A DNA stretch of 64,000 nt, from the IMG/VR virus record IMGVR_UViG_3300028131_000823, positions 62,001 to 126,000 of that record; one strand, 5' to 3'. The notes under the pieces are model-generated. The model was given only the letters and a program-made list of their open reading frames with translations. It ran no database searches and was not told where the DNA came from. The translations under genes were made by a program, and so were the position numbers. This document shows, piece after piece, positions 121 to 56,400 of the stretch (within the stretch, counting starts at the first letter, position 1; each line of letters starts with the position of its first letter).

Positions 121-154
121 AAAACCCAAGTTCTCGCAGATCTTGGGTTTTTTT
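121..154 (+). terminator. Rho-independent terminator
   Basis: AACCCAAG...CTTGGGTT hairpin followed by a T-run. Confidence 0.75.
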
Positions 155-240
155 GTTAATAACTTTAGTAAAAAAGTTGCCTCAAAATTTTCACGGGTCA
201 AAGATTATAGTTATATTAGTATTATAATTAAAACTTAAAC
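153..240 (+). promoter_or_regulatory. Early promoter repeat, copy 1
   Basis: TTGTTAATAACT...TTTCACGGGTCAAAGATTATAGTTATATTAGTATTATAATTAAAAC; TTTC-N19-TATATTAG resembles the Bacteroidota -33/-7 promoter; 8 copies in the window. Confidence 0.8.
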
Positions 241-1782: not shown

Positions 1783-1841
1783 TATTAGGAAGGTATCATT
1801 AAAAAGTTAATAACTAATTAGTAATTTAAAGGAGATTGTAT

Positions 1842-1868
1842 GAAACAATCTCCTTTTTTAGTATATAA
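1842..1868 (+). promoter_or_regulatory. Middle-type promoter GAAACAA-N13-TATATAA overlapping a terminator hairpin
   Basis: One of 11 copies with an exact 13-nt spacer; overlaps the GGAGATTGT/ACAATCTCC hairpin. Confidence 0.7.
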
Positions 1869-1884: not shown

Positions 1885-2154
1885 ATGAAAAGTATACTAG
1901 AAGAAGCAGATCAAATTATCAATCACAGAAGCGAAGAAAAAGAAAGACAATATGGCCCTTTCAGCGAGGGTATGGATAGAGCAGCATCTATTTTCAATGG
2001 CATGACTGGCTTAGAAGTTACAGGCAGAGAAATGTACATGGCCCTAATAGCTCTTAAATTTTCAAGAGAAAGTTACAATCATAAAAGAGATAACCTCCTA
2101 GATGCAGTTGCGTATATTCAAGGATTAGACAATTACTTAAACGAAAAAGAATGA
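1885..2154 (+). CDS. DUF6378-like small helical protein (nucleotide-modification associated)
   Basis: SILEEADQII..R...YG and KFSRE..NHKRDNLLDAVAY pattern. Confidence 0.6.
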   Translation: MKSILEEADQIINHRSEEKERQYGPFSEGMDRAASIFNGMTGLEVTGREMYMALIALKFSRESYNHKRDNLLDAVAYIQGLDNYLNEKE

Positions 2155-3239
2155 AAATATTATTTACAGGCTGTACGGCCAAACAAACAGACGATGACGC
2201 TTGGAAAAGAGCAAGAGTTAAAAGAATAGATGATAGTAGTATTATCTGTAATTCATTAAGAAAACAAGGTTACACAGTAGACAGAAAGAAAGTTAAATGG
2301 GGAGATGATCTTTCAGAATATGGACTTGCTATTGTAGGCCTTGGTCAATTTGGTTCTAACAATTATTCAGGTGAAATCTTTAACGCATTATATGCAATTA
2401 ATGAATGTGATAATGTTTTAGTTTTTCATGAAGATTGGAAAATTGACGGTACTATGAAATCATTTAAATCAATGTTAGATGATGAAACTTACGAAAAGAC
2501 TATAGCAAAGAAATGGAGTGACGGGAGACACTTTTATGGTGGAGTTGATAATCAACACTTTAATAAAGATGTTGCAAGACAGGTTATACAAGACATGGTA
2601 GATGCAAAATATGACGCCATTATACCGGCATTCGATTGGGGTAATAAACAACTTGTTAGAGATATTATTGGTAGTAAAAATATTTATAATATAGACCTTA
2701 CTCCTTATGTCCTAGAGAATTGGAATATTTCAACAACATATACTTCTCAAATTAAAGAAAGAAAACATATGTTGGCTTCTCTTGTAAATCATAAGCCATG
2801 GGTAAATAGAAATAAATTATCATGGCCTGTAGATTATTTCGGTGCAAAGAGTATTAAAGAGGCAAAGCAGTTAAAAACTGAAACTGATGTTTTTGAAGCT
2901 TGTGGAAAGTATTGGAGTATTTTATGTCCTGAATATCCTCATGCAGGAAGTGGCTGGTTTAGAATTAGATGGGTTTATGCTGCAATACAAAGGTCAGTAT
3001 TACTTTCAAGTGAAAAAGATACAGAAGCATTAGGTCTTCCTAAAGTTAAAGTAGAATCATTAAGTAATACAGAATTAGAAGATTATGCAAATCAACTTTC
3101 AGAAACTGTACTTAGTTATATGTGGACAAAAGATGTATTTGATGTAAAAATAAAAGAGATAGTAGAAACAGTTGGAGAAAATCTTTCAATTAGTTCACAA
3201 CCTACCACTGGAATTAGTAAACAAACTGCGTTGTTTTAA
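2151..3239 (+). CDS. Putative GT-B glycosyltransferase (T4 beta-glucosyltransferase-like)
   Basis: 362 aa; two Rossmann-like halves (MKILFTG; VDYFGAK...SILCPEYPHAGSGWFRIRW); adjacent to dCTPase and DNA polymerase. Confidence 0.5.
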   Translation: MKILFTGCTAKQTDDDAWKRARVKRIDDSSIICNSLRKQGYTVDRKKVKWGDDLSEYGLAIVGLGQFGSNNYSGEIFNALYAINECDNVLVFHEDWKIDGTMKSFKSMLDDETYEKTIAKKWSDGRHFYGGVDNQHFNKDVARQVIQDMVDAKYDAIIPAFDWGNKQLVRDIIGSKNIYNIDLTPYVLENWNISTTYTSQIKERKHMLASLVNHKPWVNRNKLSWPVDYFGAKSIKEAKQLKTETDVFEACGKYWSILCPEYPHAGSGWFRIRWVYAAIQRSVLLSSEKDTEALGLPKVKVESLSNTELEDYANQLSETVLSYMWTKDVFDVKIKEIVETVGENLSISSQPTTGISKQTALF

Positions 3240-3262
3240 TAAAAATATAAAGAACAAAAGAA

Positions 3263-3727
3263 ATGGCAAACGAAGATAATCAATGTGCAGATTTAGAGGT
3301 TAAAGACCACTACTCAGAAGGTAAAGATACTTTCGGCATGATTTACAATAAACAAAGAGAATTGCAAAGTAGATTAGGTTTAAATTATGAAAACTTAACT
3401 CTTAAAGAAATTGCAGAAATGTGGATGGTAAATAAACATGCAATGTCAGATGAGCTTAATGAAATGTTTGATGCCTTAGGCGGTATTAATGATGGAATTG
3501 GTTCAGCTGCTTGGAAATATTGGAAACAGGATAATAAGAAAGCAGAAACAATGACAGTTGCAGATTTATCAGAAGCTGATAGGTTAGAATTATTTTATGA
3601 ATGGATCGATGGCCTTCATTTCTATATGAACTTTGCACTTGCAATTGGAATGACTAGTGAGGATATTGTCAACCTTTATATGGCAAAACAAAAAGAGAAT
3701 ATTAACAGACAAGAAAGAGGATATTAA
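3263..3727 (+). CDS. All-alpha dCTPase/dUTPase (T4 gp56 / dimeric dUTPase family)
   Basis: DELNEMFD...WKYWK...EWIDGLHF...YMAKQKENINRQERGY. Confidence 0.85.
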   Translation: MANEDNQCADLEVKDHYSEGKDTFGMIYNKQRELQSRLGLNYENLTLKEIAEMWMVNKHAMSDELNEMFDALGGINDGIGSAAWKYWKQDNKKAETMTVADLSEADRLELFYEWIDGLHFYMNFALAIGMTSEDIVNLYMAKQKENINRQERGY

Positions 3728-5127
3728 TGCTATTAGATATTGAACAACGAGATAAAGAAGTAATTGTAAGCTATTATAACACAGAAGGTGAAGTAGCCTT
3801 TAAAAGATACCCAGTTGGTCAATTTCAAAATTGGTATGTAACACATGACAAAGATCGTTACAGACATGAAAGCGCACAAAATTGGGATGGTCGACCTGTT
3901 AAATTATCAAATGCAAGACAATATAATAAATTTTCTTTGATCTATTTTATAGATCAACTTCCAGAAGCTGATAAAAAAGAAATACTTGCATATAATAAAC
4001 CAAGAACATATTTCGTAGACATTGAAACAGAGATTGTAGATGGCTTCCCTAAACCAGAAGAGGCTAAGACACGTATCCTGTCATTCTCTATCATTACACC
4101 AGAAAGAAAGGCTATAGTTTTAGGCTTAAAAGATTTGGATGATATGACAGGTATGCAAGATGATACTAACAAATATTTTAAATCATTGGATAGTGATTGG
4201 AGTCTATCATATTATAAGTTTAAGAATGAATATGATATGGTTTATAACTTTATTCATAAGTTTATGCCTAAGTTTCCAATGATGACAGGTTGGAACTTTA
4301 TTAATTATGATTGGCAATATATTGTTAACCGATGTAAGAGACTACAAATTGATATTAGTGAATCTGCAAAAACAGGTGCAGTTGATAGAATGGATGGCAG
4401 ACCACTTCATATGGGAATACTTGATTATATGCAATTGTATGATAAGTATGATCGTTCTGTAAAGGTTAAAGAATCAAATACCCTTGATTATGTTTCAGGT
4501 CAAATTGTAGGTCTTAAAAAGATTAAATACAATGGCGGCTTACAGGAATTGTATGAAAAAGATTTTAGAAAATATATTTATTATAACATTGTCGATTCAT
4601 GTTTGGTATATTATATAGATCAGAAGATTAAAGCAATGGATGTTCTTTTAACTCTTGCAAATATTACGCAAATGCCACTTTATAAAGCAGCAAGCCCAGT
4701 TGCTATGACAGAAGCATTAATGGCAAGAAAGCTTAAAGAACAAAATAAAATTATTGCAACTGAAAGAAGAGATGACAATAGAAAAGACGGTAGTTATGCC
4801 GGCGCTTTTGTTAAAGAACCAATCGTTGGTTTTTATAGTGGAGTAAGTGCATTTGACTTTGCTTCTCTATACCCTTCAATTATGCGACAATTTAATATTT
4901 CTCCTGATTCTTTTGTTGAAACTGTACAAAAACATGAGATAGAAGAAAAAAGAAAAAATAAAGATTATATTGTTTGTGAAAATGGCGCAGTCTATACAAC
5001 AGAAGATTCTGTCTTGAAAAGAATCCTCACCGACCTGTATAGTCAACGTAAGGAATATAAGGCAAAATCATTTGAATATTTTGAGAAGGCAAGATTAATT
5101 CGAAAAAAAATTAGTCAGCTAAAGTAG
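3727..5127 (+). CDS. Family B DNA polymerase, N-terminal subunit (3'-5' exonuclease, motif A, first fingers helix)
   Basis: DIETE exoI, GWNFINYDWQY exoII, YNIVDS exoIII, FDFASLYPS motif A; lacks motifs B and C. Confidence 0.92.
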   Translation: MLLDIEQRDKEVIVSYYNTEGEVAFKRYPVGQFQNWYVTHDKDRYRHESAQNWDGRPVKLSNARQYNKFSLIYFIDQLPEADKKEILAYNKPRTYFVDIETEIVDGFPKPEEAKTRILSFSIITPERKAIVLGLKDLDDMTGMQDDTNKYFKSLDSDWSLSYYKFKNEYDMVYNFIHKFMPKFPMMTGWNFINYDWQYIVNRCKRLQIDISESAKTGAVDRMDGRPLHMGILDYMQLYDKYDRSVKVKESNTLDYVSGQIVGLKKIKYNGGLQELYEKDFRKYIYYNIVDSCLVYYIDQKIKAMDVLLTLANITQMPLYKAASPVAMTEALMARKLKEQNKIIATERRDDNRKDGSYAGAFVKEPIVGFYSGVSAFDFASLYPSIMRQFNISPDSFVETVQKHEIEEKRKNKDYIVCENGAVYTTEDSVLKRILTDLYSQRKEYKAKSFEYFEKARLIRKKISQLK

Positions 5128-5268
5128 TCAACTTTTGGGAGGTTGAAGATATATAATCCATCAACAACTACACCCAATCAGATGATCAAAATTAGATCAT
5201 CTTTTGTTTTTTAACAGGTTATTAATGTAATAACCAGGAATGTAAAATTTAAAATATATTAAATAAAT

Positions 5269-6267
5269 ATGAATATTTTCAAAGAAAGAATAGAATACAA
5301 GCCATTTGAATATCCAGAATATTATACAGAAGGTTGGCTTCCACAGGCTCAAGCGTTTTGGTTACATACTGAAATTCCAATGCAGAGTGATATAAAAGAT
5401 TGGAAAGAAAACTTAATGCCACATGAAAGAAATCTTGTTGGTAATATTCTTTTAGGCTTTGCTCAAACTGAATGTGCTGTTAGTGATTATTGGACTACAA
5501 TGGTTACTCATTGGTTTCCAAAACATGAGATCAAACAAATGGCCATGATTTTTGGTAGCCAAGAAACTATTCACGCCACAGCCTATTCTTATTTAAATGA
5601 AACTTTAGGTCTTGAAGATTTTGCTGCATTCCTACATGAGCCATCAATGGCAGATAAGTTTGAACATCTTTCAGGAGTAGAAAATGATTATACACATGAG
5701 GATTTACAAAAGAATCCAGCAGCAAGAAGAGAAGTTGCAAGAAGTTTAGCAACATTTTCAGCATTTGCAGAAGGCGTAAGCCTTTATAGTTCATTTGCAG
5801 TCTTATATTCTTTTCAAATGAGAAACTTATTAAAGGGAATTGGTCAACAAATGAAATGGTCAGTTAGAGACGAATCATTACATTCAAAAATGGGTTGTAA
5901 ATTATTTAGACACATGTGTGATGAATATCCTGAACTTAGAGAAGAAGTTAAAAACGATGTAATAAGAGCTGCTGAGATTATGGTAGAAATGGAACATGCA
6001 TTTATTGATAAGATATTTGAAATGGGAAATCTTGAAAATCTTAAAGCAAACGATCTTAAAAACTTTATTTTAAGAAGAACAAATGAAAAACTTATTGAAT
6101 TAGGTTATAACCAACATTTTGAATTTGATACAGAATCAGCAAAAGAACTTGATTGGTTTTATCATTTAACAGGAGGAGTAGAACATAGCGACTTTTTTGC
6201 AATTAGACCAACTGCATATTCTAAAGCAGGTGAAGATGAGGTCTGGGACGAGGAGTCAATTTTTTAA
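5269..6267 (+). CDS. nrdB: Ribonucleotide reductase class Ia beta subunit
   Basis: QAFWLHTE, ETIHATAY, EGVSLYSSF, RDESLH diiron motifs. Confidence 0.95.
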   Translation: MNIFKERIEYKPFEYPEYYTEGWLPQAQAFWLHTEIPMQSDIKDWKENLMPHERNLVGNILLGFAQTECAVSDYWTTMVTHWFPKHEIKQMAMIFGSQETIHATAYSYLNETLGLEDFAAFLHEPSMADKFEHLSGVENDYTHEDLQKNPAARREVARSLATFSAFAEGVSLYSSFAVLYSFQMRNLLKGIGQQMKWSVRDESLHSKMGCKLFRHMCDEYPELREEVKNDVIRAAEIMVEMEHAFIDKIFEMGNLENLKANDLKNFILRRTNEKLIELGYNQHFEFDTESAKELDWFYHLTGGVEHSDFFAIRPTAYSKAGEDEVWDEESIF

Positions 6268-6278
6268 ATATATAAATT

Positions 6279-8114
6279 ATGGAATTATTTGTAGAACAAG
6301 AAGATTCACCTAAGGCTGATAAAATAGCCCAAAAACTAGGATGGATAAAAGGTACTGACTATCCAGTTTGGGGCCACACTGAAATTTATTTAAAGACAAT
6401 TTCTAAAGGATATTGTTTAGAAGGAGAAACACCAAAGGATGCTTATTGGAGAGTAGCAACCACTATTGCAAGAAGACTTAGAAGATCTGATATGGCTAGT
6501 AAGTTCTTTGATTATATTTGGAAGGGTTGGTTAAATTTAGCGTCTCCAGTACTTTCAAACACTGGTACAGAAAGAGGATTGCCAATTTCTTGTTTTGGAA
6601 TTGATGTTGCAGATAGTATTCATGATATTGGTAAAAAGAATCTTGAAATGATGTTACTTGCAAAGAATGGTGGAGGAGTTGGAATTGGCGTAAATCAAAT
6701 TAGACCTGCAGGAACTGAAATTACAGACAATGGAACTTCAGATGGTGTTGTACCATTTTGTAAAATATATGACTCTACAATTCTCGCTACAAATCAAGGA
6801 GCAGTAAGAAGAGGAGCAGCCTCTGTTAATATAGATATTGAACATGATGATTTTTGGGATTGGTTAGAAATTAGAGAACCAAAGGGAGATATAAATAGAC
6901 AATGTTTAAATATGCACCAATGCGTAATTGTTAGTGATGGCTTTATGCAAAAGGTACAAGAAGGAGATAAAGAAGCAAGAAAGAGATGGACTGCACTTAT
7001 TAAAAAACGTAAAGCAACTGGAGAGCCATATATTATGTATAAAGGAAATGTTAATAGAGCAAATCCTGAAGCATATACAAAGAATGGTTTAAAAGTTTAC
7101 ATGACAAATATTTGTAGTGAAATTACATTACATACTGATGAGAATCACAGTTTTGTTTGTTGTTTAAGTTCATTAAACCTTACAAAATATGACGAGTGGA
7201 AAAACACTGATTTAATTAGAACCGCAACGTGGTTTCTTGATGGTGTTATGGAAGAATTTATTCAAAAGGCAAAATACAGACAAGGCTTTGAAAATGCAGT
7301 TCGTTCTGCTGAAAAAGGTAGAGCACTTGGTCTTGGCGTCTTAGGTTGGCATACATATCTACAAGAAAGAGGTATTCCATTCGAAGGTCTTACAGCACAG
7401 TTTGAAACAAGAAAGATATTTTCTCAAATTAAATTAGAGAGCGAAGCAGCAAGTAGAGAACTTGCAGTAGAATATGGAGAACCACTATGGTGTGTTGGTA
7501 CAGGCATGAGAAATACACATTTAAGAGCAGTTGCACCTACGGTAACTAATTCTAAATTAAGTGGCAATGTTAGCCCAGGTATTGAGCCATGGGCCGCTAA
7601 TGTATTTACTGAACAAACTTCTAAAGGTACATTTATTCGTAAAAATGTTTCACTTGTAAGTTTCCTAGAAAAAATTGGTAAAAATACAAATGCAGTTTGG
7701 AACAAGATTCTTGAAGATAATGGTTCGGTTTACGGTCTAGATTTTATTGACAACTACATGGTAGAGCATAACATGTGGGGAGGTAAAGTTATTGAAAAAC
7801 TAGAATGGGAAAGTTTAGATAAAATGGAACAAACTAAATGGGTTGAAGCAAAAGAAGTATTTAAAACATTTAAAGAAATTAATCAACTTGAACTAGTTAA
7901 GCAGGCTGGAGTTAGACAACAATATATCGATCAATCTTGTAGTCTTAATCTTGCGTTTCCAAATACAGCAAGTCCAAAGTTTATTAATTTAGTTCATTTA
8001 GAAGCCTACAAACAAGGTATTAAGACTCTCTATTATATGAGAACTGAAAGCGTATTAAGAGGTGATATTGCCTCAAGTGCAACTAGCGAAGATTGCGTAT
8101 CATGCGATGGCTAA
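6279..8114 (+). CDS. nrdA: Ribonucleotide reductase class Ia alpha subunit
   Basis: LPISCF, TNICSEI, CCLSSLN, APT, KTLYYMR, C-terminal CVSC. Confidence 0.95.
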   Translation: MELFVEQEDSPKADKIAQKLGWIKGTDYPVWGHTEIYLKTISKGYCLEGETPKDAYWRVATTIARRLRRSDMASKFFDYIWKGWLNLASPVLSNTGTERGLPISCFGIDVADSIHDIGKKNLEMMLLAKNGGGVGIGVNQIRPAGTEITDNGTSDGVVPFCKIYDSTILATNQGAVRRGAASVNIDIEHDDFWDWLEIREPKGDINRQCLNMHQCVIVSDGFMQKVQEGDKEARKRWTALIKKRKATGEPYIMYKGNVNRANPEAYTKNGLKVYMTNICSEITLHTDENHSFVCCLSSLNLTKYDEWKNTDLIRTATWFLDGVMEEFIQKAKYRQGFENAVRSAEKGRALGLGVLGWHTYLQERGIPFEGLTAQFETRKIFSQIKLESEAASRELAVEYGEPLWCVGTGMRNTHLRAVAPTVTNSKLSGNVSPGIEPWAANVFTEQTSKGTFIRKNVSLVSFLEKIGKNTNAVWNKILEDNGSVYGLDFIDNYMVEHNMWGGKVIEKLEWESLDKMEQTKWVEAKEVFKTFKEINQLELVKQAGVRQQYIDQSCSLNLAFPNTASPKFINLVHLEAYKQGIKTLYYMRTESVLRGDIASSATSEDCVSCDG

Positions 8115-8200: not shown

Positions 8201-8227
8201 TAAAAAACAATGATATATAGAAATATT

Positions 8228-9430
8228 ATGATTTTACAATATAACGAATTTTTAACAGAAAAAGAAGTTTCCATATCAAGAAGAAACTTTTATACAAAGG
8301 CTTTTCCACAATTTCTTAATGAAGATGAATTAGTCGAAGCCGCTAATTTAATAAATGAGGGTCTTTTTGATAATCTTTCTTTAGAAAAAATAGAAATGTT
8401 AAATGAGTCAGAACTTTATGAAAGTTTACTTTTAGAATTAAATTTAATACAAAGGCTAAAAGATAAAGCAACAGATGCATATCAAGTTGTAAAAGATAAA
8501 GGTAAAAAAGCTTTAAGTGCTATTCAACAAGGGGTGTTAGCAATTGGAGGTAAAATAGCCAATATTATTAAAAAGATTGTAGAAAATATTAAAGCAGTTG
8601 CTAAAAAAGCATTTGAAGCTGGTAAAAAATTAGCAAATAGCGCAAAGTCAAAAATGATAGCAGCTTTTAAAAATGAATTAGATTCTGGAAAGACTAATGA
8701 CAAAGATGCAATGAAAAACAAACTTAAATCTTTAAAAGACGATGTTCAAAATGGTAAAAAGGTAGGAAAACACGTTATAAAATGGTGTACTAAAGACGTT
8801 GCTAAGGAAACTGCTGACGCAATTATAAAAGGTGCAAAAGAAGATACTGATAAATCAAAGAAAGATAAAGATACAAGTGAATCTATGGGATACAGAAGCA
8901 TGGATTTATTTATGGAACATTCGTTATATAATACATTTTCAGCAGCAATTGATGCAGGTGAAATGGATCTTAATGAAATAGAACAACAATTAAACGAAGC
9001 TGGAGATAAAAAAGCAGCTAAAATTCCATTTATTTCTACTATTGCAAAATTTGTCAATAAGTTTCCACCTTTTAGTATTCTAAAAACGCTTAAAGAAAAA
9101 GGAGCTGAGGTAACAGGAGGATTATTAGGAAATTTATCTAAAATGGCAACTAAAGTAATGGGAGCTCCAGGACCTTATAAGTTTTTAGCAGTTGCTACAT
9201 TCATAGGTCTCGCTCTTGAAATAATAATGAAAGATACTATAAAAACCCTGACTACAAGCGTAATTACTACACTGTTCTTTCCACCAGCTGCTCCATTTAT
9301 TACTGCAGTGTTTAATGCAGCTTATGTACTTGCTGCAATCGCAGCTCTTGAAGTAGTTTTAGGTACTATTGAAGATAATGATGCAGATGATGCAAAGGCA
9401 GCAGCAAAGACATCCTCTAATAAAGCTTAA
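8228..9430 (+). CDS. Putative virion-internal protein with hydrophobic C-terminal helices
   Basis: Late motif at 8212; leader MILQYNEFLTE; Lys/Ala-rich helices followed by hydrophobic segments. Confidence 0.55.
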   Translation: MILQYNEFLTEKEVSISRRNFYTKAFPQFLNEDELVEAANLINEGLFDNLSLEKIEMLNESELYESLLLELNLIQRLKDKATDAYQVVKDKGKKALSAIQQGVLAIGGKIANIIKKIVENIKAVAKKAFEAGKKLANSAKSKMIAAFKNELDSGKTNDKDAMKNKLKSLKDDVQNGKKVGKHVIKWCTKDVAKETADAIIKGAKEDTDKSKKDKDTSESMGYRSMDLFMEHSLYNTFSAAIDAGEMDLNEIEQQLNEAGDKKAAKIPFISTIAKFVNKFPPFSILKTLKEKGAEVTGGLLGNLSKMATKVMGAPGPYKFLAVATFIGLALEIIMKDTIKTLTTSVITTLFFPPAAPFITAVFNAAYVLAAIAALEVVLGTIEDNDADDAKAAAKTSSNKA

Positions 9431-10236: not shown

Positions 10237-11445
10237 ATGGAAGTAACTGAAGCTGTAGAAGAAAACATAGATAATTTATCTATAGAAGAATTAGAAGCAC
10301 TTGCTGCTGATTATGACATCATGAGTAATAAGTTCACGGCCTACGAACAGGCCGTGAAACTTTCGTTAAATAGTATCTATGGTGCATTCGGTAATAAGTG
10401 GTTTCATTTTTTTGATATTAACATTGCAGAATCAATTACTCTTCAAGGTCAAAATGCTATTATTTATTCAGAAACAGTATTAAATAAATACTTTAATGAT
10501 TTTTGGCATAAAGACACTAAGTTACATGAAGAACTTGGAATTAAGGTAAAAGGCAAGTTACATAGGCCATCTGTTATTTACATAGATACAGATTCTAACT
10601 ACGTGCAATTTGGTGAAATGTATGATTCTGTAGAATGGTTAGATGAGTCTAAAAAAATGGATGTTACAACATTTACATTAGAAGTTTACAACCGTAGAAT
10701 TAAGGAATTTATTTCTTTAGCGATGAAAAAATATGCAGTTGTTCATAATACTGATAATTTCTTAGTATTTGAACTAGAATCTATTGCATACTCAGGTATT
10801 TGGATGAAAAAGAAAAAGTATATTCAAGATATTGCATGGGAAGATAAGCTTTCTGTAAAAGATAGACACCCTTCTCTTAAAAAGATTAAGACAATTGGCT
10901 ACGATACTATTCAAAGTTCTACTCCATTATTTGCAAGACAAAAATTAGTAGAAGCACTTAAGTTATTGTTCACAAAGGGAACAAAGCCAGGTCCAGTTGA
11001 ATTACAAGAAATGGTACAATTCTTAAAGCAATGTAAAACTGAATTTAAGCTTGTAAATATAGACGATATTTCTTTTAATAGAAGAACTAATAATATCCAA
11101 CAGTATATTATTGACGATAATAAAGAATTTCAAATTGGACTTAAGTGTCCACCAAATGTAAAGGCTGCAGGTTTTTATAACTATCTCTTAAATAATAATT
11201 CTAAATACAAGAATAAGTATAAGATGATAGCAAATGGTGAAAAACTTAGGATCTATAATACAAAGCACCCTATTTGTGATACATTCGCATATTTACCAGG
11301 AGGGCATCCATATGAGATAGCACCTGAAATTGACTACGATACTCAATTTGGAAAATGCATGATTGATCCAATTAACAGAGTTCTTAAAGCAATAGGCTTA
11401 CAAGAATTAGATACAAACCTAATATATGCTTCGGCATTATTTTAA
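10237..11445 (+). CDS. Family B DNA polymerase, C-terminal subunit (motifs B and C, thumb)
   Basis: KLSLNSIYG motif B, YIDTDS motif C, KKKY. Confidence 0.92.
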   Translation: MEVTEAVEENIDNLSIEELEALAADYDIMSNKFTAYEQAVKLSLNSIYGAFGNKWFHFFDINIAESITLQGQNAIIYSETVLNKYFNDFWHKDTKLHEELGIKVKGKLHRPSVIYIDTDSNYVQFGEMYDSVEWLDESKKMDVTTFTLEVYNRRIKEFISLAMKKYAVVHNTDNFLVFELESIAYSGIWMKKKKYIQDIAWEDKLSVKDRHPSLKKIKTIGYDTIQSSTPLFARQKLVEALKLLFTKGTKPGPVELQEMVQFLKQCKTEFKLVNIDDISFNRRTNNIQQYIIDDNKEFQIGLKCPPNVKAAGFYNYLLNNNSKYKNKYKMIANGEKLRIYNTKHPICDTFAYLPGGHPYEIAPEIDYDTQFGKCMIDPINRVLKAIGLQELDTNLIYASALF

Positions 11446-27146: not shown

Positions 27147-28010
27147 ATGAAAAAGACATTAATCCTAAATGAGAAGGTTTTAACTATAAGCGAATGGTTA
27201 ACTGAAAACCAACCAGGTGAAATCCAAACAACTCAAACAACCGATATAAAATCAGATATTGATACAATATTAACAAAATTAAAAGATTTAGAAGATAATA
27301 TTGAAGAAGCATTAAATTCATATGAAGAATATGTAACTACTTTAAATGAAAATGAATTAAACGAAGACGAAGCTGGAAAAATAAAAGATTTTGTGTTTAT
27401 TGCTCCTAGAGTAAGAAAGATGCAACAAAAGGCAAATAAAATAAGACTTAATAAAGTAGATCTTGATTTTGCTATAGCAAATGCACCGTCTGATAAAAAG
27501 AAAAGACTTCAAGCTAAAGCTAAAGATTTAGGAAAAGATGTTACAGAATTAGAAGATTCTATAGATGATTATCAAAAAGATTCAGGAGCAACTTATTCTT
27601 TAAAAATCAAAAACATGGAAAGAATTAAAGGTAAACTATCTGCTATTAAAAGAAAGACAGGTCTTGAAGATGATCCAAATAAAAAAGCTGATTTAAAAAG
27701 ACAAATGCAAACTTTAGCCGATGGCTTTAAAGATGAAGCAGAAGCTGCTAAAGAACTTCAAGATAAAGAAGGTCCAAGTAAGGAAGAAATGGCTAAAGAA
27801 AAATTTAAAAATCAAAAGGAAGCATTGATTAAACAAGGTTTTAAACAAGGTGAAGGTCCTGAAGGATCAGATAAGAAAACTATTAAAGACCCTGAAGGAA
27901 ATGCTATTGTTTTCCACAAACCAGAAGTTGAAACAGGTGGAATAGATACAGGATCAGGATATAATGAATCACAATTTGATGGTTCAGGAAGACAAGCTCC
28001 TATTATTTAA
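27147..28010 (+). CDS. Late coiled-coil protein, possibly head-internal
   Basis: Late motif at 27108; ISEWLTE and LNENELNE protease-site-like motifs. Confidence 0.6.
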   Translation: MKKTLILNEKVLTISEWLTENQPGEIQTTQTTDIKSDIDTILTKLKDLEDNIEEALNSYEEYVTTLNENELNEDEAGKIKDFVFIAPRVRKMQQKANKIRLNKVDLDFAIANAPSDKKKRLQAKAKDLGKDVTELEDSIDDYQKDSGATYSLKIKNMERIKGKLSAIKRKTGLEDDPNKKADLKRQMQTLADGFKDEAEAAKELQDKEGPSKEEMAKEKFKNQKEALIKQGFKQGEGPEGSDKKTIKDPEGNAIVFHKPEVETGGIDTGSGYNESQFDGSGRQAPII

Positions 28011-28017
28011 GACTAAA

Positions 28018-28635
28018 ATGATACCTAAGAAAATTCATCAAATTTGGATTGGCAATTCTCCAATTCCTGAAAAGTGCAAATTATTTATGGAACGTATGTA
28101 TAATTTGCACCCTGATTGGGAATATAAATTATGGACAAATGATGATATATTTAAAATTCATTATAAAGAAGATAAATTTTTACAAAGTTATTGGAAAGAC
28201 GTCGATACTCATTTTAAACCAGCACATATCGCAGATAGAGCAAGATTATTAATCTTAAGAGATTTTGGTGGAGTTTACGTAGATGTAGATGCAAATCCTA
28301 TAAGATCATTTAATAATATTATTGAAAATATTAATGAAAATACTTCATTTTTTGGTGGAGTAAGACCTAAGAGCATAGAAGAGAAAAGAGGAGCACTTAT
28401 TGACTGTACTGTTATGGGAGCCTCTAAAGATTCTAGAATTATCAAAGAAGTTTTATCTATTTACAAAAATGTAGATTGGGCATGGGGAGGAAGAGCAATT
28501 TCAGATAAAATGTTTGAATGTTTAGGGCCAGATGTTTCTTTATTTAATTATAAAAGCTTTTACGATACTAAAATAACGGAAGATACTATTGTAATTCATG
28601 ATACTCCAGAAAATAGATTATGGTCTTGGAAATAA
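28018..28635 (+). CDS. GT32/OCH1-like DXD glycosyltransferase
   Basis: MIPKKIHQIWIG, ADRARLLIL..FGGVYVDVD. Confidence 0.88.
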   Translation: MIPKKIHQIWIGNSPIPEKCKLFMERMYNLHPDWEYKLWTNDDIFKIHYKEDKFLQSYWKDVDTHFKPAHIADRARLLILRDFGGVYVDVDANPIRSFNNIIENINENTSFFGGVRPKSIEEKRGALIDCTVMGASKDSRIIKEVLSIYKNVDWAWGGRAISDKMFECLGPDVSLFNYKSFYDTKITEDTIVIHDTPENRLWSWK

Positions 28636-29245: not shown

Positions 29246-29740
29246 TTGAAAATTCAAAAATCAAACAATCCTAAACAAGCCCATCGATATGGTATAAAAC
29301 TCGATGGGCTTCCTAGGAGTATCAGACAATTTCTAATAGAAAATAGAAGCCTAAATGAATGGGCAAATGATGTTCAATTCCTCGAACAAATAATTAGAAT
29401 AGAGTCAAATAATCTCAAACTTAAGAATAGTACAAAAAGAAATAAACTTTATTTTGACTGTACGACAGAGACGCCAGTCCCAATGGACGACTTAGTGGAA
29501 TCTTATGATACTGTAGAATGGACTTGTGCAATCAGTATGAAACCCATTCAATCTAAGTTTAATAATTTCAGTCTAGAAAATTTTATACACCCTGAGTACC
29601 TCGATGTGCTTGAGGCACCGATGGTAGATAGTCGAATACTTAAAAGCAGTGTTGAATTTCGTAAATATTGCAAAAAACTCTTATTAGAAGAACAAAAAGA
29701 GTTCATGAGAGTTATTAAAAAGGGATCAACGATTAATTGA
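29246..29740 (+). CDS. Hypothetical protein
   Basis: 164-aa ORF with a TTG start. Confidence 0.6.
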   Translation: MKIQKSNNPKQAHRYGIKLDGLPRSIRQFLIENRSLNEWANDVQFLEQIIRIESNNLKLKNSTKRNKLYFDCTTETPVPMDDLVESYDTVEWTCAISMKPIQSKFNNFSLENFIHPEYLDVLEAPMVDSRILKSSVEFRKYCKKLLLEEQKEFMRVIKKGSTIN

Positions 29741-30445
29741 TCTTCCTTTCATATTATTGTGCCAATAATGTTTAATATATTTACCACTAGATAGTGCATC
29801 AAATGGCATAACCTTTACATTAATATTACTTCCATTTTTTATACATTTCCATAAAGAGTAATTAACACTTAATTGATCTCTTCTAGAACCATTTACATAT
29901 TCATTAGACCATGTTTTAAACATGTTTATGCAATTGCTATTATTTCTCATTACTATTAACCCAGTTGCAAAAAGTCCATTATTTTTTGGATAATCCTCTT
30001 TATTATATTTTTTAACAACTTTATCAATTATTTCAGCATGATCTAATTTTAGAGCTCTTACAACACTAGCTTCTTTATATACACAGTCTCTTTGAGGGTG
30101 TTTCATGAATGCAACATCGTAATTATTATTATCTAATTCATATTCTTTCATGAAATTATTAAGATCATCTTTTATTAAAACATCCCCATGTACACATACG
30201 ATATTTTCATATAAAGATCCTTTAAATAATTTGTAAAATTCAAGCCTATGCATCATTGCAATTCTTTTTGGATCATCAATAGATTCATATTCTTTAGACA
30301 ATGGTCTAATATCCCAAATATCTGACTTTAATTCTTTATTATCAGTATAAAGTATATAGTCCCATCCTTCTGTTTTAACTAAAGGTTCTTTTAAGCTTCC
30401 ATACTCTCCAACTGTAAATGCGTATATTGCGTTTTTATTACTCAT
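29726..30445 (-). CDS. DUF616-like (GT-A) glycosyltransferase
   Basis: AIYAFTVGEYGSLKEP, WDYILYTDN, HPQRDCVYKEA, RRDQLS; late motif on the minus strand at 30464-30471. Confidence 0.8.
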   Translation of the reverse strand: MSNKNAIYAFTVGEYGSLKEPLVKTEGWDYILYTDNKELKSDIWDIRPLSKEYESIDDPKRIAMMHRLEFYKLFKGSLYENIVCVHGDVLIKDDLNNFMKEYELDNNNYDVAFMKHPQRDCVYKEASVVRALKLDHAEIIDKVVKKYNKEDYPKNNGLFATGLIVMRNNSNCINMFKTWSNEYVNGSRRDQLSVNYSLWKCIKNGSNINVKVMPFDALSSGKYIKHYWHNNMKGRSINR

Positions 30446-30498
30446 GAATATTTATTGTTTGTTTATATATCAACTTAATTAAAATTATATTTTGCTAA

Positions 30499-30582
30499 TT
30501 GTTTATAACTTTTGAAAAAAAGTGTTAAAAAGTTTTCACAAGTCAAAGATTATAGTTATATTAGTATTATAATTAAAACTTA
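30499..30582 (+). promoter_or_regulatory. Early promoter repeat, copy 2
   Basis: Same core GTCAAAGATTATAGTTATATTAGTATTATAATTAAAAC. Confidence 0.8.
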
Positions 30583-30588
30583 ATAATA

Positions 30589-30864
30589 ATGCATAATAAA
30601 AACACAACCATCGATAAAGTAGCTTTAGAATTATTTAATAAACACTACAGTGAATTAAATAAGACTAAACAATTCGAATGTAATCAAGAAATGGTAAACA
30701 ATCCAAAATGGCTAGCTCCTTTCTGGAAGCAGCCAATTTATAAATCAGAAACTCAAAAAATTTGGGATGAAATAATTAACCATGCAAATAAAGCGGGTAA
30801 GGTAGTAGATTGTGGAGCTTGTAAAAACAACGGATGCATCGTTTGTGAAGAAACAAATCATTAA
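30589..30864 (+). CDS. Hypothetical early protein with C-terminal CxxC..CxxC
   Basis: CGAC...CIVC. Confidence 0.6.
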   Translation: MHNKNTTIDKVALELFNKHYSELNKTKQFECNQEMVNNPKWLAPFWKQPIYKSETQKIWDEIINHANKAGKVVDCGACKNNGCIVCEETNH

Positions 30865-47132: not shown

Positions 47133-47984
47133 ATGAACGTTTTACAAAAATACATTACATATTGTGAAAAGAAAGGAATTGCTTTTCAAATGGATAATCA
47201 TGTAAGACCTTATGACGATACGACACTTTTTTGTCCAGCTGGCATGCAGCAGTTTAAAGATCGTTTTAAAAATCCAGATAATACTACAGTTGCAAATGTT
47301 CAATCCTGTTTAAGACTACAAGACATTGACGAGATAGGAGATGGAAGCCATCTTTTATACTTTAACATGTTAGGTCTTTTTAGTTTTGGAGAAATGACAG
47401 TTAACCAAGCCGTTGAATTTTGGATGGAATTTGTACAAGAAGAACTTAAAATCCAAGTAGACTGTGCAACAATTCATTCTGATAAGTTTGATAATTGGAA
47501 ATGGATGTATGATATTTATAAAACTCCATTAAAATTAGACGATGAATGTATTTGGACTGATGGAGAAATGGGAGGTTATTGTACAGAGTTTTACCATAAA
47601 GGAATAGAAATAGGTAATATAGTAAATACGTCAGATAAATTTATAGATGTCGGGTTTGGACTTGAAAGACTTGAGGCTATAGTTAATGGCACTGAGGTAA
47701 AGAGTGCAAACGAGACACTTGAAGAGACTATTTTAAAGATAGCAGATTCTGGTTATAAGCCAGGTCCACAGAAACAAGGATATGTACTTCGTAAACTTCT
47801 TAGAATCTTATACAATAATAATGGTTATATGGATCATCCATTTTTTAAGAGGGAAGTTGAAAGACAAGAAAAAACAAAACTTAGGTATCTTAGACTTAAG
47901 GAAAAGCACCAAGATAAAGATAAAGAATGGTGGTTTGATACACATGGTATCGATATTGATGAAATGAACGAATTAGGACTATGA
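47133..47984 (+). CDS. alaS: Compact alanyl-tRNA synthetase (catalytic core and tRNA-recognition helices only)
   Basis: TLFCPAGMQQFK, QSCLR, FNMLGLFSFG, IWT.GE.GG.CTEFY, IEIGNIV, IDVGFGLERL, QGYVLRKLLR, FDTHG. Confidence 0.85.
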   Translation: MNVLQKYITYCEKKGIAFQMDNHVRPYDDTTLFCPAGMQQFKDRFKNPDNTTVANVQSCLRLQDIDEIGDGSHLLYFNMLGLFSFGEMTVNQAVEFWMEFVQEELKIQVDCATIHSDKFDNWKWMYDIYKTPLKLDDECIWTDGEMGGYCTEFYHKGIEIGNIVNTSDKFIDVGFGLERLEAIVNGTEVKSANETLEETILKIADSGYKPGPQKQGYVLRKLLRILYNNNGYMDHPFFKREVERQEKTKLRYLRLKEKHQDKDKEWWFDTHGIDIDEMNELGL

Positions 47985-48529
47985 CGATAAAAGAATCTTA
48001 TATAAAGGGTTTATTTGAAATAGTTCCTCAAACATTTAAAGATGATAGAGGAGAATTTGTAGAAACTTATAATGAGGAAAAATTAAAAGACATTATTCCA
48101 TATCAATTTGTACAAGACAATCAAAGTATTTCTAAAAAAGGAGTCTTTAGAGGCATTCATATGCAAATGGGAGATTGGGCTCAAGGTAAACTTGTAAGAG
48201 TTTCAAGCGGTGCAGCCATTGATTATGCTGTAGATCTTAGACCAGATTCTGCGACTTTTGGTCAATGGGATAGTGTAATGTTAACACCTGAAGCAAATAA
48301 TCAATATTGGGTTCCACCTGGATTTGGACATGCATTTTTAGCATTAGAAGATAATACAACATTTTGTTATAAATGTACTAATTTATATAATAAGGAAAGT
48401 GAAGAATGTATAAAGTGGAACGATAGTGATATTTATTTAGAATTTTTACATTATAATGGAGACATATTAGTTTCTGAAAAAGACGAACAAGGAATTACAC
48501 TAAAAGAATTTAAAAACAAACATTGTTAA
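47981..48529 (+). CDS. rmlC: dTDP-4-dehydrorhamnose 3,5-epimerase
   Basis: DDRGEF.E, FVQDNQS.S..GVFRGIH, QGKLVRV, VDLR..S.TFGQW, GFGHAF. Confidence 0.92.
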   Translation: MTIKESYIKGLFEIVPQTFKDDRGEFVETYNEEKLKDIIPYQFVQDNQSISKKGVFRGIHMQMGDWAQGKLVRVSSGAAIDYAVDLRPDSATFGQWDSVMLTPEANNQYWVPPGFGHAFLALEDNTTFCYKCTNLYNKESEECIKWNDSDIYLEFLHYNGDILVSEKDEQGITLKEFKNKHC

Positions 48530-49246: not shown

Positions 49247-49356
49247 ACTTAACATTTTTAAGATGAAAAAATACATTAACAAATACACACTAACATGGGC
49301 TGCATATCTGATAGCAGCATCTATTGCGCTTTACCTATTATACTGGTATGGGTAAA

Positions 49357-49443
49357 TTGTTCATAACTTTTTAAAAAAAGTGCTCTAAAATTTTCACGAG
49401 TCAAAGATTATAGTTATATTAGTATTATAATTAAAACTTAAAC
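49357..49443 (+). promoter_or_regulatory. Early promoter repeat, copy 3
   Basis: Conserved repeat core. Confidence 0.8.
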
Positions 49444-49446
49444 AAA

Positions 49447-49899
49447 ATGGAAATAATAGAAAATTTAAAACATGTAAGTAGCAACACTGTATTTGCTGGT
49501 ACTGTTACTCAAAAAGACAATAAAGGTAAACAATTAAAATTTACGGTTTCAAATCATTTAGAAGAAGGAGTTGAATACAAATTCAGATATACTTGTAAAT
49601 GTAGAGCTGGATTTTTAAATATCAATAACCAAACAGCTACGCCTGAACAATTTATCTCATCAACTTATGCTTTTTTAGATAATGTACAAGTTTTGAAAAA
49701 ATTCGATGACGGTACTGAACATTGGTTTAATGTATTAACTACTAAAGGTGGTAAATTTCACTCAATTGATAAAGCATTCTTAAACCACTTAAAAGTAACT
49801 CACATGCACAATGCTTGGAAAAAAATGGTTGACTATGATCTTTGGAAAAATATGAACACAAAAACCCATGCCAGTTACGCATATAAAATAAACAAATAA
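49447..49899 (+). CDS. Hypothetical early protein
   Basis: Follows the early repeat. Confidence 0.7.
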   Translation: MEIIENLKHVSSNTVFAGTVTQKDNKGKQLKFTVSNHLEEGVEYKFRYTCKCRAGFLNINNQTATPEQFISSTYAFLDNVQVLKKFDDGTEHWFNVLTTKGGKFHSIDKAFLNHLKVTHMHNAWKKMVDYDLWKNMNTKTHASYAYKINK

Positions 49900-50174: not shown

Positions 50175-50262
50175 TTGTTCATAACTTTTTGAAAAAAGTT
50201 GCCTCTAGATTTTTTTATGTCAAAGATTATAGTTATATTAGTATTATAATTAAAACTTAAAC
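50175..50262 (+). promoter_or_regulatory. Early promoter repeat, copy 4
   Basis: Conserved core with a variant -33 region. Confidence 0.75.
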
Positions 50263-50265
50263 AAA

Positions 50266-51025: not shown

Positions 51026-51032
51026 TAAAAAA

Positions 51033-55926: not shown

Positions 55927-56400
55927 ATGAAAATAATATTAGTAGGCAAGGCAGCAGCAGGTAAAGATTATTTTAGAGCAAGGCTGGCAGATAAAGGATT
56001 TAAAGGAGCTGTAAGCCACACAACAAGATCTCCAAGAGAAACAGAAACAGAAGGTGTAGATTATTATTATACAGATGATGAGACCTTTATGAAAATTGTA
56101 GAATCAGGTGATATGCTTGAGTATATGGATTTTAAAGGTTGGAAATATGGAATGACAAGAGAAGAATATGAAAAAAGTGATGTTTTAATTATGTCACCAG
56201 ATGGTCTTAAGTTATTACCAGAAGAAATTAAAAAGGAATGTTTAATAATTTATTTAGACATTAACCCTACCACAAGGTTAACTAGATTAATCTTGAGAGA
56301 TGATAAAGCTTACCATCCAATGTCAAGAGAGATAGAGGATATGAAGCAATTTAACGAATTCGAAGATTATGATCTACGAGTGACCAATCCAGAATTTTAG
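55927..56400 (+). CDS. gmk: Guanylate kinase-like protein
   Basis: GKAAAGKD, VSHTTRSPR..E.EGVDYY, E.......YG. Confidence 0.88.
   Translation: MKIILVGKAAAGKDYFRARLADKGFKGAVSHTTRSPRETETEGVDYYYTDDETFMKIVESGDMLEYMDFKGWKYGMTREEYEKSDVLIMSPDGLKLLPEEIKKECLIIYLDINPTTRLTRLILRDDKAYHPMSREIEDMKQFNEFEDYDLRVTNPEF

What the first reader, a model, noticed from the sequence alone, without database searches (positions are those of the whole stretch)
1885..5127. Putative DNA hypermodification cassette: DUF6378-like, BGT-like glycosyltransferase, dCTPase, PolB
Seen: four overlapping or adjacent genes behind one middle promoter. Known: in T4, gp56 dCTPase removes the canonical nucleotide and the GT-B enzyme BGT glucosylates hmC. 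The 362-aa ORF matches BGT in size and layout, although I cannot confirm homology. No hydroxymethylase or TS-like gene is in this window. Inference: the genome carries a sugar-modified pyrimidine, possibly with a non-glucose sugar given rmlC and other sugar genes, and the chemistry may be new for Bacteroidota phages.
Basis: inference. Interest (0 to 1): 0.68.

Follow-up and report, generated by a model that had tools for sequence, protein, structure and literature searches.

The report
Phage DNA sugar-modification gene cassette
A large marine T4-like phage carries, just upstream of its split DNA polymerase, a gene set (a small DUF6378 protein, a T4 beta-glucosyltransferase-like enzyme and a T4 gp56-type dCTPase) that most likely puts a sugar on hydroxymethylcytosine in its DNA. 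This is a new family within a known kind of anti-restriction chemistry.

Summary
The four ORFs are real and tightly packed, with terminator-like hairpins on both sides.

- **362-aa ORF:** it has no Pfam or NCBIfam match. It folds confidently (pLDDT 93) as a minimal GT-B, and T4 beta-glucosyltransferase is the closest solved structure (Z 18.4).
- **154-aa ORF:** a clear T4 gp56 dCTPase homologue (32% identity, E 4e-23).
- **"PolB":** only the N-terminal half of a split polymerase. The C-terminal half lies at 10237-11445.

Comparative genomics supports a role in DNA modification:
- In at least 11 small-phage contigs the same DUF6378-GT pair is fused into an operon with a T4 gp42-type dCMP hydroxymethylase.
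- In T4-like relatives the slot between DUF6378 and gp56 holds other modules instead: a T4 alpha-glucosyltransferase homologue, or a 5-hmdU-DNA-kinase module.

The 205-kb contig holds no hydroxymethylase. The assembly breaks in repeat-rich fibre genes. A relative whose contig bridges both ends of ours carries the hydroxymethylase exactly in the unassembled interval.

Those genes fit glycosylation of collagen-like fibres better.

Verdict: a new family-level member of the known hmC-glycosylation kind. The chemistry is untested.

The parts
1828..1856 (+). terminator-like hairpin followed by a T-run. It closes the upstream unit 29 bases before the cassette.
   Evidence: 12-pair stem; sequence read
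1885..2154 (+). DUF6378 protein, 89 aa, all-helical. It is the conserved partner of the glycosyltransferase and of dCMP hydroxymethylases in other phages. Its biochemical role is unknown.
   Evidence: Pfam PF19905 4.7e-11. 63-78% identical across unrelated phages. Present in 19 of 23 GT-bearing records. Directly upstream of the GT in 9 small-phage loci. omega 0.05-0.15. AF2 pLDDT 81, no fold match.
2151..3239 (+). 362-aa minimal GT-B glycosyltransferase, a predicted DNA 5-hydroxymethylcytosine glycosyltransferase. It belongs to a large uncurated family.
   Evidence: No Pfam or NCBIfam hit. AF2 pLDDT 93.2, pTM 0.90. Foldseek top hit T4 BGT, E 6e-6. VIA Z 18.4, 299 residues aligned, over the next family SenB at 16.9. 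656 clusters at 50% identity with E<=1e-3. Operon with dCMP hydroxymethylase in 11 loci. omega 0.07-0.18.
3263..3727 (+). 154-aa all-alpha NTP pyrophosphatase, homologue of T4 gp56 dCTPase/dUTPase
   Evidence: BLASTP against T4 gp56: 32% identity over the full length, E 4e-23. PF08761 29.3 bits against a cut-off of 22.9. phrog_173 4e-20. tblastn finds 1394 phage records, dominated by T-even-type phages, many annotated dCTP pyrophosphatase. omega 0.03-0.14.
3727..5127 (+). N-terminal half of a split family-B DNA polymerase (3'-5' exonuclease domain plus the start of the polymerase domain)
   Evidence: PF03104 and PF00136 positions 18-137 of 453. phrog_262 positions 76-495 of 856. 70-72% identical in relatives G018, G039, G041, G042 and G044.
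5180..5202 (+). terminator-like hairpin followed by a T-run after the polymerase N-half
10237..11445 (+). C-terminal half of the split family-B DNA polymerase. It is separated from the N-half by nrdB, nrdA and two unknown ORFs.
   Evidence: PF00136 positions 154-385. nrdB and nrdA at 5269-6267 and 6279-8114. The arrangement is conserved in G018.
55927..56400 (+). guanylate-kinase-like nucleoside monophosphate kinase. It is a candidate, by inference only, for phosphorylating the modified dCMP.
   Evidence: PF00625 1.5e-15. No T4 gp1 homologue in the genome.

Best explanation
Window 1885-3727 is a cytosine-hypermodification cassette of the T4 type.

Proposed steps:
1. The gp56-like enzyme hydrolyses dCTP/dCDP (and dUTP) to the monophosphate.
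2. A gp42-type dCMP hydroxymethylase makes 5-hm-dCMP. It is not on this contig, but it lies in the unassembled interval in the relative whose contig bridges both ends of ours.
3. Kinases raise 5-hm-dCMP to the triphosphate, and the split PolB incorporates it.
4. After replication, the 362-aa GT-B enzyme transfers a hexose from a common host NDP-sugar (most likely UDP-glucose) onto the hydroxymethyl group in duplex DNA, as T4 BGT does.
5. DUF6378 is an obligate but biochemically undefined partner of this pathway.

The slot between DUF6378 and gp56 is a swappable island. Related phages carry other post-replicative modifiers there.

Shown: the folds, the homologies, the gene neighbourhoods and purifying selection. 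Inferred: the acceptor base, the sugar, and the presence of the hydroxymethylase in this very phage.
For: **Fold.** pLDDT 93 GT-B model. T4 BGT ranks first by Foldseek (E 6e-6) and by VIA (Z 18.4, 299 of 351 residues; T4 AGT Z 14).

**gp56 homology.** E 4e-23. Homologues among cultured phages are dominated by T-even-type phages, many annotated dCTP pyrophosphatase.

**Operon.** DUF6378-GT-hydroxymethylase lie adjacent in 11 of 14 small-phage and other loci examined. All five GT-bearing records that are >=90% complete have a TS homologue.

**Hydroxymethylase type.** All these TS homologues keep Cys, and the motif RSND...D carries Asp at the T4 gp42 D179 position. Their best PDB hits are the CMP and dCMP hydroxymethylases.

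**Collinear relative.** G018 (GT 71% identical) has the cassette plus ThyA plus the hydroxymethylase.

**Island.** The same slot holds a T4 AGT homologue in G042 (PF11440, 3e-18) and a 5-hmdU DNA kinase domain in G039 (PF18723, 5e-8).

**Actinophages.** DSL-LC01 has the GT, a GT paralogue, a gp56-like protein and a DUF6378 homologue clustered beside a C5-methylase. Gordonia phage Sixama has the same set, but no DUF6378 homologue was detected in the stretch examined.

**Selection.** omega is about 0.1 on all three genes.

**Gap.** ENA contig k141_299544 carries collinear homologues of both ends of our contig: 78-80% identity on the left flank, 87-95% on the right. Between them it holds ClpA-hydroxymethylase-ClpP.
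Against: - No TS-family gene is found in 204,977 bases, in the 5.4-kb extension, or in the first 16 kb of a ~90%-identical contig, even with an exhaustive profile search (best E 0.31).
- There is no TET/JBP and no C5-methylase.
- Several sites where other relatives carry the hydroxymethylase are continuous in this genome and hold other genes.
- No sequence-level match to the T4 BGT family: PF09198 did not hit, and hhalign probability is 0.5-32%.
- Generic GT-B enzymes score only 1.5-4 Z units lower.
- Some relatives have the hydroxymethylase but not this GT, so the link is not one-to-one.
- No chemistry has been measured.
Confidence: 0.68

Rival explanations
1. Orphaned cassette. This phage lineage has lost the hydroxymethylase. 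The gp56-like enzyme then works with the phage dCMP deaminase and the host thymidylate synthase to shift pools from dC to dT for a 30% GC genome, and as a dUTPase. The GT-B is retained for another acceptor, or the loss is too recent for decay to show.
For: - No TS homologue on the contig.
- A dCMP deaminase is present at genome 8955-9389, but there is no ThyA, ThyX or trimeric dUTPase.
- GC is 27-37%.
- Positions that are syntenic with G018, G039 and G042 lack the hydroxymethylase block, and ClpA and ClpP are absent too.
Against: - GT, DUF6378 and gp56 all show omega of about 0.1 out to dS 0.65.
- The nearest relative that spans the assembly gap has ClpA-hydroxymethylase-ClpP exactly there.
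- CheckV rates the contig 75% complete.
- In T4, an active dCTPase without a substitute nucleotide stops DNA synthesis (established T4 genetics).
Confidence: 0.17
2. The GT-B glycosylates something other than DNA (virion or collagen-like fibre proteins, or a host envelope glycan), like the phage's many other glycosyltransferases. Its position next to replication genes is then incidental.
For: - The genome encodes many other GTs (GT2, GT4, GT8, GT14, GT25, GT32, TOD1-like), an rml pathway, UGM and sulfotransferases.
- The GT-B fold alone does not give the acceptor.
- 65% of mined phage GT contigs have no base-modification neighbour (bioRxiv 10.1101/2023.12.21.572611).
Against: - This family is fused into operons with the dCMP hydroxymethylase in 11 loci, including complete 30-kb genomes that lack UGM.
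- The same slot in relatives holds known DNA-modifying families, AGT and the 5-hmdU DNA kinase.
- The solved DNA glucosyltransferase BGT is the best structural match.
Confidence: 0.08
3. The acceptor is a different hydroxylated pyrimidine: 5-hydroxycytosine as in RB69/DLP3, or 5-hydroxymethyluracil. The sugar is galactofuranose supplied by the phage UGM.
For: - TS homologues can make 5hodCMP, and RL38J1 uses a phage UGM for DNA galactosylation (PMC13326640).
- This genome has a UGM at 143434-144519.
- In actinophage DSL-LC01 a UGM lies directly downstream of the GT homologue.
Against: - All TS homologues linked to this GT family keep Asp at the E. coli D169 position (RSND), whereas all tested 5hodCMP synthases have Asn there (PMC13326640). 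They also have Asp, not Asn, at the cytosine/uracil specificity position.
- Of the 15 records searched, 9 of which carry this GT (among them all five >=90% complete), only our own genome has a UGM.
Confidence: 0.07

Closest known systems
T4 hmC glucosylation system (gp42 dCMP hydroxymethylase, gp56 dCTPase, beta-glucosyltransferase; PDB 1J39/1QKJ)
   Same: - A gp56 homologue (32% identity).
- A minimal ~350-aa GT-B whose nearest solved structure is BGT.
- A position in the replication module next to gene 43.
- A gp42-type hydroxymethylase (Asp at D179) in relatives.
   Different: - No detectable sequence similarity to BGT (not Pfam PF09198).
- A conserved DUF6378 partner that T4 lacks.
- The hydroxymethylase is not adjacent, and is not on this contig.
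- No gp1 dNMP kinase homologue.
- The polymerase is split.
T4 alpha-glucosyltransferase (Pfam PF11440)
   Same: A true AGT homologue occupies the identical slot (DUF6378 - X - gp56 - PolB) in the related contig G042.
   Different: The protein in this window is not an AGT homologue (AGT structures Z 14 against BGT 18.4; no PF11440 hit).
GT-B / thymidylate-synthase-homologue gene clusters mined from metaviromes (Pyle et al., bioRxiv 10.1101/2023.12.21.572611)
   Same: A phage GT-B enzyme next to a ThyS homologue, implying pre-replicative hmC followed by glycosylation. Their neighbourhoods include DNA polymerase and dCMP deaminase.
   Different: I could not check whether this particular family and its DUF6378 partner are in their set. 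Here the ThyS homologue is distant, not clustered.
Arabinosyl-5-hydroxycytosine pathway of RB69 / DLP3 / HY126 (PMC13326640; PDB 9IQZ)
   Same: A T4-like phage with a gp56-type dCTPase, a TS homologue and GT-B DNA glycosyltransferases. The HY126 GT is among the Foldseek hits (E 2.4e-4).
   Different: The linked TS homologues here lack the D169N signature. There are no arabinose-5-phosphate isomerase or UDP-arabinose genes. The GTs of that system resemble GT4 enzymes rather than BGT.
5-hmdU DNA kinase-based thymidine hypermodification (Pfam PF18723)
   Same: A homologous kinase domain sits in the same island in relatives G039 and G041.
   Different: Absent from this window. It shows what the island is for, not what this GT does.

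Membership tests
T4 beta-glucosyltransferase family (Pfam PF09198 / CAZy GT63) | Sequence match to the family profile | tested here: not met
   No PF09198 hit at E<=0.1. Profile against the PDB gave nothing. hhalign of a 41-sequence profile against T4 BGT gave probability 0.5%. A 203-sequence profile gave probability 32%, with 42 columns aligned in the equivalent N-terminal region.
T4 beta-glucosyltransferase family (Pfam PF09198 / CAZy GT63) | Compact two-Rossmann GT-B fold of ~350 aa with BGT as the nearest structure | tested here: met
   pLDDT 93.2. Foldseek ranks 1-3 are BGT. VIA Z 18.1-18.4, rmsd 4.4-4.8, 296-299 residues aligned, spanning 1-340 of the model against 1-351 of BGT.
T4 beta-glucosyltransferase family (Pfam PF09198 / CAZy GT63) | Catalytic Asp100 base and the UDP-binding Arg191/Arg195/Arg269/Glu272 equivalents | tested here: inconclusive
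   The family has nearly invariant E94-D95-W96 after strand 4, invariant E244, and a G266-S-G-W-F-R271-x-R273 motif. No residue-level superposition was available to equate these with the BGT residues.
T4 beta-glucosyltransferase family (Pfam PF09198 / CAZy GT63) | Encoded together with a dCMP hydroxymethylase | tested here: inconclusive
   Met in relatives: 11 operons, 5 of 5 complete genomes, and G018. Not met on the phage's own contig. Present in the unassembled interval of the bridging relative.
T4 beta-glucosyltransferase family (Pfam PF09198 / CAZy GT63) | Transfers glucose from UDP-glucose to 5hmC in duplex DNA | not testable with these tools
   Needs an enzyme assay or nucleoside mass spectrometry.
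T4 gp56 dCTPase/dUTPase (all-alpha NTP pyrophosphatase, Pfam PF08761) | Full-length homology to T4 gp56 | tested here: met
   32% identity over 154 against 171 aa, E 4e-23. PF08761 29.3 bits against a cut-off of 22.9.
T4 gp56 dCTPase/dUTPase (all-alpha NTP pyrophosphatase, Pfam PF08761) | Hydrolyses dCTP/dCDP | not testable with these tools
   Specificity (dCTP or dUTP only) cannot be read from the sequence. No solved relative was found by sequence.
DUF6378 (Pfam PF19905) | Profile match above the gathering score | tested here: met
   43.2 bits against 27.1.
Family-B DNA polymerase (T4 gp43 type) | Exonuclease and polymerase domains in one chain | tested here: not met
   The domains are split between 3727-5127 and 10237-11445. 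Together they cover the family profile.
Post-replicative methyltransferase + TET/5mYOX + GT pathway (PMC8256090) | C5-cytosine methyltransferase and a TET/JBP dioxygenase in the genome | tested here: not met
   PF00145 and PF12851: no match at E<=1 in 204,977 bases.
5-hydroxycytosine (5hodCMP synthase) glycosylation pathway (PMC13326640) | TS homologue with Asn at the E. coli ThyA D169 position | tested here: not met
   All 14 linked TS homologues read RSND at that position, so Asp is kept, as in T4 gp42. The criterion comes from PMC13326640 section 28.

The most novel reading that the evidence does not exclude
The phage really has no thymidylate-synthase-family hydroxymethylase, yet it keeps a gp56-type dCTPase and a BGT-like DNA glycosyltransferase under purifying selection. 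It would then make its acceptor base by an enzyme of an unknown family, or glycosylate DNA at a site never described. DUF6378 would be part of that route.
Probability: 0.1. Interest if true: 0.85.

Novelty: new member of a known kind. Interest (0 to 1): 0.52.

Why it matters
Glycosylated hydroxymethylcytosine is the classic phage shield against restriction enzymes and CRISPR, and it is known in detail mainly from T-even coliphages. Three points would extend that picture.

1. A large uncurated glycosyltransferase family (656 clusters at 50% identity) appears here as a BGT-like DNA glycosyltransferase. It is spread across small marine phages, actinophages and ~200-kb T4-like phages.
2. DUF6378 is a highly conserved partner that no one has studied.
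3. In the T4-like relatives, one genomic slot swaps between BGT-like, AGT-like and DNA-kinase modules. That is a natural system for studying how phages diversify their DNA chemistry.

All three points can be tested directly with cloned genes and hmC-DNA.

Tried and rejected
- **Sequence searches with the 362-aa protein:** Pfam, PHROGs (only an unnamed family), NCBIfam and the PDB gave nothing.
- **Profile-profile against T4 BGT:** stayed below significance.
- **DUF6378:** a PDB sequence search, Foldseek and an exhaustive VIA search gave no credible fold match (best Z 5.6). Small MazG/HisE pyrophosphatases at Z 4.3-4.9 are within noise.
- **406-aa ORF at 8210-9430 as a substitute base-modifying enzyme:** rejected. 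It is Lys/Ala-rich with a hydrophobic tail, has no family hit, and the Atlas scores are <=0.79.
- **UGM as the sugar donor source for this GT family:** rejected as a general rule.
- **T4 gp1 kinase homologue:** none found.
- **The 353-361-aa proteins after DUF6378 in G039, G041 and G044:** not detectably related to this GT.
- **A premature conclusion, withdrawn:** for a while I inferred from synteny that the contig closes on itself across one collagen-like gene and truly lacks the hydroxymethylase. Searches overturned this. The two collagen-like genes are different, and a relative carries about 15 kb, including the hydroxymethylase, between them.
- **Closing the gap:** attempts through IMG/VR and exact-protein look-ups on this phage's own strain failed, because every assembly stops in the fibre repeats. 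The ENA record could not be searched as a whole.
Full report
**Setting.** The window is bases 62001-126000 of a 204,977-base IMG/VR viral contig that CheckV rates 75% complete. GC is about 30%, and nearly all genes lie on one strand. It encodes T4-type portal, prohead protease, gp23 capsid, terminase, sheath, clamp loader, UvsX, gp41 helicase, gp46/47 and ligase proteins. The nearest capsid relatives are an uncultured 462-kb phage (50% identity), Prevotella Lak phages (35-38%) and Tenacibaculum phage pT24 (28%). A Bacteroidota host is therefore plausible but untested.

**The observation.** Four ORFs lie at 1885-2154, 2151-3239, 3263-3727 and 3727-5127. They overlap by 4 bases and by 1 base, with one 23-base gap. 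Terminator-like hairpins sit at 1828-1856 and 5180-5202. A specific 'middle promoter' cannot be shown. Sigma-70-like matches do not exceed shuffled sequence, and the phage's conserved ~95-nt intergenic element is absent upstream of 1885.

**What each gene is.**
- *1885-2154:* matches Pfam DUF6378.
- *3263-3727:* aligns over its whole length with T4 gp56 dCTPase/dUTPase (32% identity, E 4e-23). Its 1394 homologues among cultured phages are dominated by T-even-type phages, many annotated dCTP pyrophosphatase.
- *3727-5127:* covers only the exonuclease domain and the first part of the polymerase domain of a family-B polymerase. The rest is a separate ORF at 10237-11445, beyond nrdB and nrdA. The split is conserved in relatives.
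- *2151-3239:* has no Pfam, NCBIfam or PDB sequence match. With an alignment of 41 homologues AlphaFold gives a confident model (pLDDT 93.2, pTM 0.90) of two Rossmann-like domains. Foldseek ranks T4 beta-glucosyltransferase first (E 6e-6). VIA-align gives Z 18.4 over 299 residues, ahead of SenB (16.9), GT4 enzymes (about 15) and T4 AGT (14). At the sequence level it does not hold.

**The family.** A full-library profile search finds 656 clusters (at 50% identity) with E<=1e-3, and 234 with E<=1e-30. Nearly all are 320-370 aa.

**Evidence from neighbourhoods.** This carries the functional argument.
- *Co-occurrence with a TS homologue.* Of 38 IMG/VR records carrying the GT, 15 have a thymidylate-synthase homologue. 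That includes all five records that are >=90% complete, which are ~30-kb phages, two of them with terminal repeats.
- *Operon structure.* In 11 of 14 loci examined the order is DUF6378 - GT - TS homologue, with gaps under 200 bases or overlaps.
- *Type of TS homologue.* All keep the catalytic Cys, and the motif RSND...D has Asp at the position of T4 gp42 D179. Their best PDB matches are CMP hydroxymethylase MilA and T4 dCMP hydroxymethylase. They also keep Asp at the E. coli D169 position, which is Asn in all tested 5-hydroxy-dCMP synthases (PMC13326640). The predicted product is therefore 5hm-dCMP, not 5ho-dCMP.
- *DUF6378.* It occurs in 19 of 23 GT-bearing records. It also lies within 2 kb of hydroxymethylases on contigs that lack this GT. 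It is 63-78% identical across otherwise unrelated phages.
- *Actinophages.* In DSL-LC01 a GT homologue, a second paralogue, a gp56-like dUTPase_2 protein and a DUF6378 homologue cluster with a C5-methylase inside the replication module. Gordonia phage Sixama carries the same set, except that no DUF6378 homologue was detected in the stretch examined.

**The island.** G018 is a 170-kb contig collinear with this genome. It has the same DUF6378 - GT - gp56 - PolB-N arrangement (79, 71, 48 and 69% identity), plus a true ThyA and a 284-aa hydroxymethylase elsewhere. Four other relatives keep DUF6378, gp56 and PolB-N but carry different genes between them:
- G042 has a 407-aa homologue of T4 alpha-glucosyltransferase (PF11440, 66 bits against a cut-off of 25).
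- G039 and G041 have a 5-hmdU-DNA-kinase-domain protein (PF18723, 33 bits against 25), with an inositol-phosphate-synthase-like protein and an FkbM methyltransferase.
- G044 has three other proteins.

These relatives have the hydroxymethylase but not this GT. The slot is therefore a swappable post-replicative DNA-modification island, and the 362-aa GT is one of its alternative cargoes.

**The missing hydroxymethylase.**
- *What the contig lacks.* It has no TS-family gene by PF00303, by a dedicated profile, or by an exhaustive six-frame hmmsearch (best E 0.31). It also has no ThyX, TET/JBP, C5-methylase or trimeric dUTPase. It does have a dCMP deaminase.
- *Sites in other relatives.* Sites where G018, G039 and G042 carry the gene are continuous here and hold other genes.
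- *The assembly break.* The contig's 3' end stops inside collagen-like repeats in every assembly I could find. A 96%-identical contig (G004) extends 5.4 kb beyond the 5' end and stops inside another repeat-rich fibre gene.
- *The bridging relative.* ENA contig k141_299544 spans both breaks. Its left flank (Branch, DUF2827, Impact_N, PMM and LOG genes) is collinear with genome 194-204 kb at 78-80% identity. Its right flank matches the 5.4-kb extension and genome 42-2035 at 87-95% identity. Between the flanks lie fibre paralogues, PrsW, an RNaseH-like gene, ClpA, a 296-aa hydroxymethylase with the same RSND...D motif, ClpP, a 745-aa collagen-like gene and two fibre genes.
- *Conclusion.* By synteny the hydroxymethylase should lie in the roughly 15-20 kb that no assembly of this strain has resolved. 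I put that at about 0.8. It is not shown.

**Selection.** Among relatives at 85-99% nucleotide identity, omega is 0.07-0.18 for the GT, 0.05-0.15 for DUF6378 and 0.03-0.14 for gp56. There are no stops or frameshifts.

**The sugar.** The genome does encode:
- rmlA-, rmlB-, rmlC- and rmlD-like genes, UGM, UDP-glucose dehydrogenase and PMM;
- APS kinase and several sulfotransferases;
- many GTs.

These genes lie among collagen-like proteins, beside a GT25 fused to an OGFOD2-like dioxygenase domain. That resembles collagen hydroxylysine glycosylation. Of the 15 records searched for UGM, 9 of which carry this GT (among them all five >=90% complete), only our own genome has one. The complete small phages carrying this GT thus have no UGM, so a common host NDP-sugar, most simply UDP-glucose, is the parsimonious donor. 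A phage UGM does feed DNA galactosylation in RL38J1 (PMC13326640), so a furanose cannot be excluded.

**Comparison with the known.** The logic is that of T4: dCTPase, hydroxymethylase, then post-replicative glycosylation. GT-B enzymes next to ThyS homologues have already been mined in bulk from metaviromes (bioRxiv 10.1101/2023.12.21.572611). New here are this GT family's assignment, its BGT-like architecture without sequence similarity, the DUF6378 partnership and the swappable island in large marine T4-like phages.

**Verdict.** This is a new member of a known kind, of moderate interest.

Noticed in passing
window 3727-5127 and 10237-11445: The family-B DNA polymerase is split into two ORFs 5.1 kb apart, with nrdB, nrdA and two unknown ORFs between them. 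The split is conserved in at least five related contigs.
   Followed up: partly
window 153-239, 30497-30607, 49352-49463, 50233-50295, 50975-51038, 58127-58215, 58406-58500 (and at least 4 more copies elsewhere in the genome): A ~95-nt, almost invariant intergenic element ends a few bases before start codons. It is probably a phage-specific promoter or 5' leader. One copy lies at the very start of the contig.
   Followed up: partly
window 27964-28635, 29726-30445 (-), 47981-48529, 54984-55730, 59770-60636; genome 126-204 kb: There is an unusually large glycan toolkit: GT32, TOD1-like GT, rmlC, GH16 and GT8 in the window. Outside it lie rmlA/B/D-like genes, UGM, UDP-glucose dehydrogenase, PMM, APS kinase, several sulfotransferases, GT2 x3, GT4 and GT14, plus a GT25-OGFOD2-like dioxygenase fusion next to collagen-like proteins. 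This suggests glycosylated or sulfated collagen-like fibres.
   Followed up: partly
window 47133-47984; genome 152114-153646: An alanyl-tRNA synthetase N-terminal fragment (283 aa) lies directly upstream of rmlC. A 510-aa Gln/Glu-tRNA-synthetase-like gene and a CCA-adding enzyme lie elsewhere in the genome. tRNA-Ala and tRNA-Thr are at window 59721-59795 and 61374-61448.
   Followed up: no
window 58509-59117: A phage-encoded sigma-70-family factor (regions 2 and 4) sits just after two copies of the conserved intergenic element.
   Followed up: no
window 8210-9430: A 406-aa Lys/Ala-rich, helical protein with a hydrophobic C-terminus lies between nrdA and the polymerase C-half. It has no family match and no homologue in the collinear relative G018.
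   Followed up: partly
genome 8955-9389 (outside the window): A dCMP deaminase is present although the contig has no ThyA, ThyX or trimeric dUTPase. The collinear relative G018 has a true ThyA inserted between the homologues of two genes that are adjacent here (genome 127834-128417).
   Followed up: partly
genome 203.8-204.977 kb; L083 10898-11743; L333 4979-9630: Families of fibre genes share a ~150-aa N-terminal domain but carry different collagen-like or coiled-coil repeat bodies. These repeats are where every short-read assembly of this phage breaks.
   Followed up: partly
L095 11964-13159 (related contig G043): In one relative DUF6378 is followed by a Dam-type adenine methyltransferase instead of a glycosyltransferase, 1.1 kb downstream of the hydroxymethylase. 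This is further evidence that DUF6378 travels with DNA-modifying enzymes.
   Followed up: no
genome 143434-144519: The UGM found in this contig was not detected in G003, a contig whose GT gene is 99% identical and whose span should cover that region. UGM may therefore be strain-variable.
   Followed up: no
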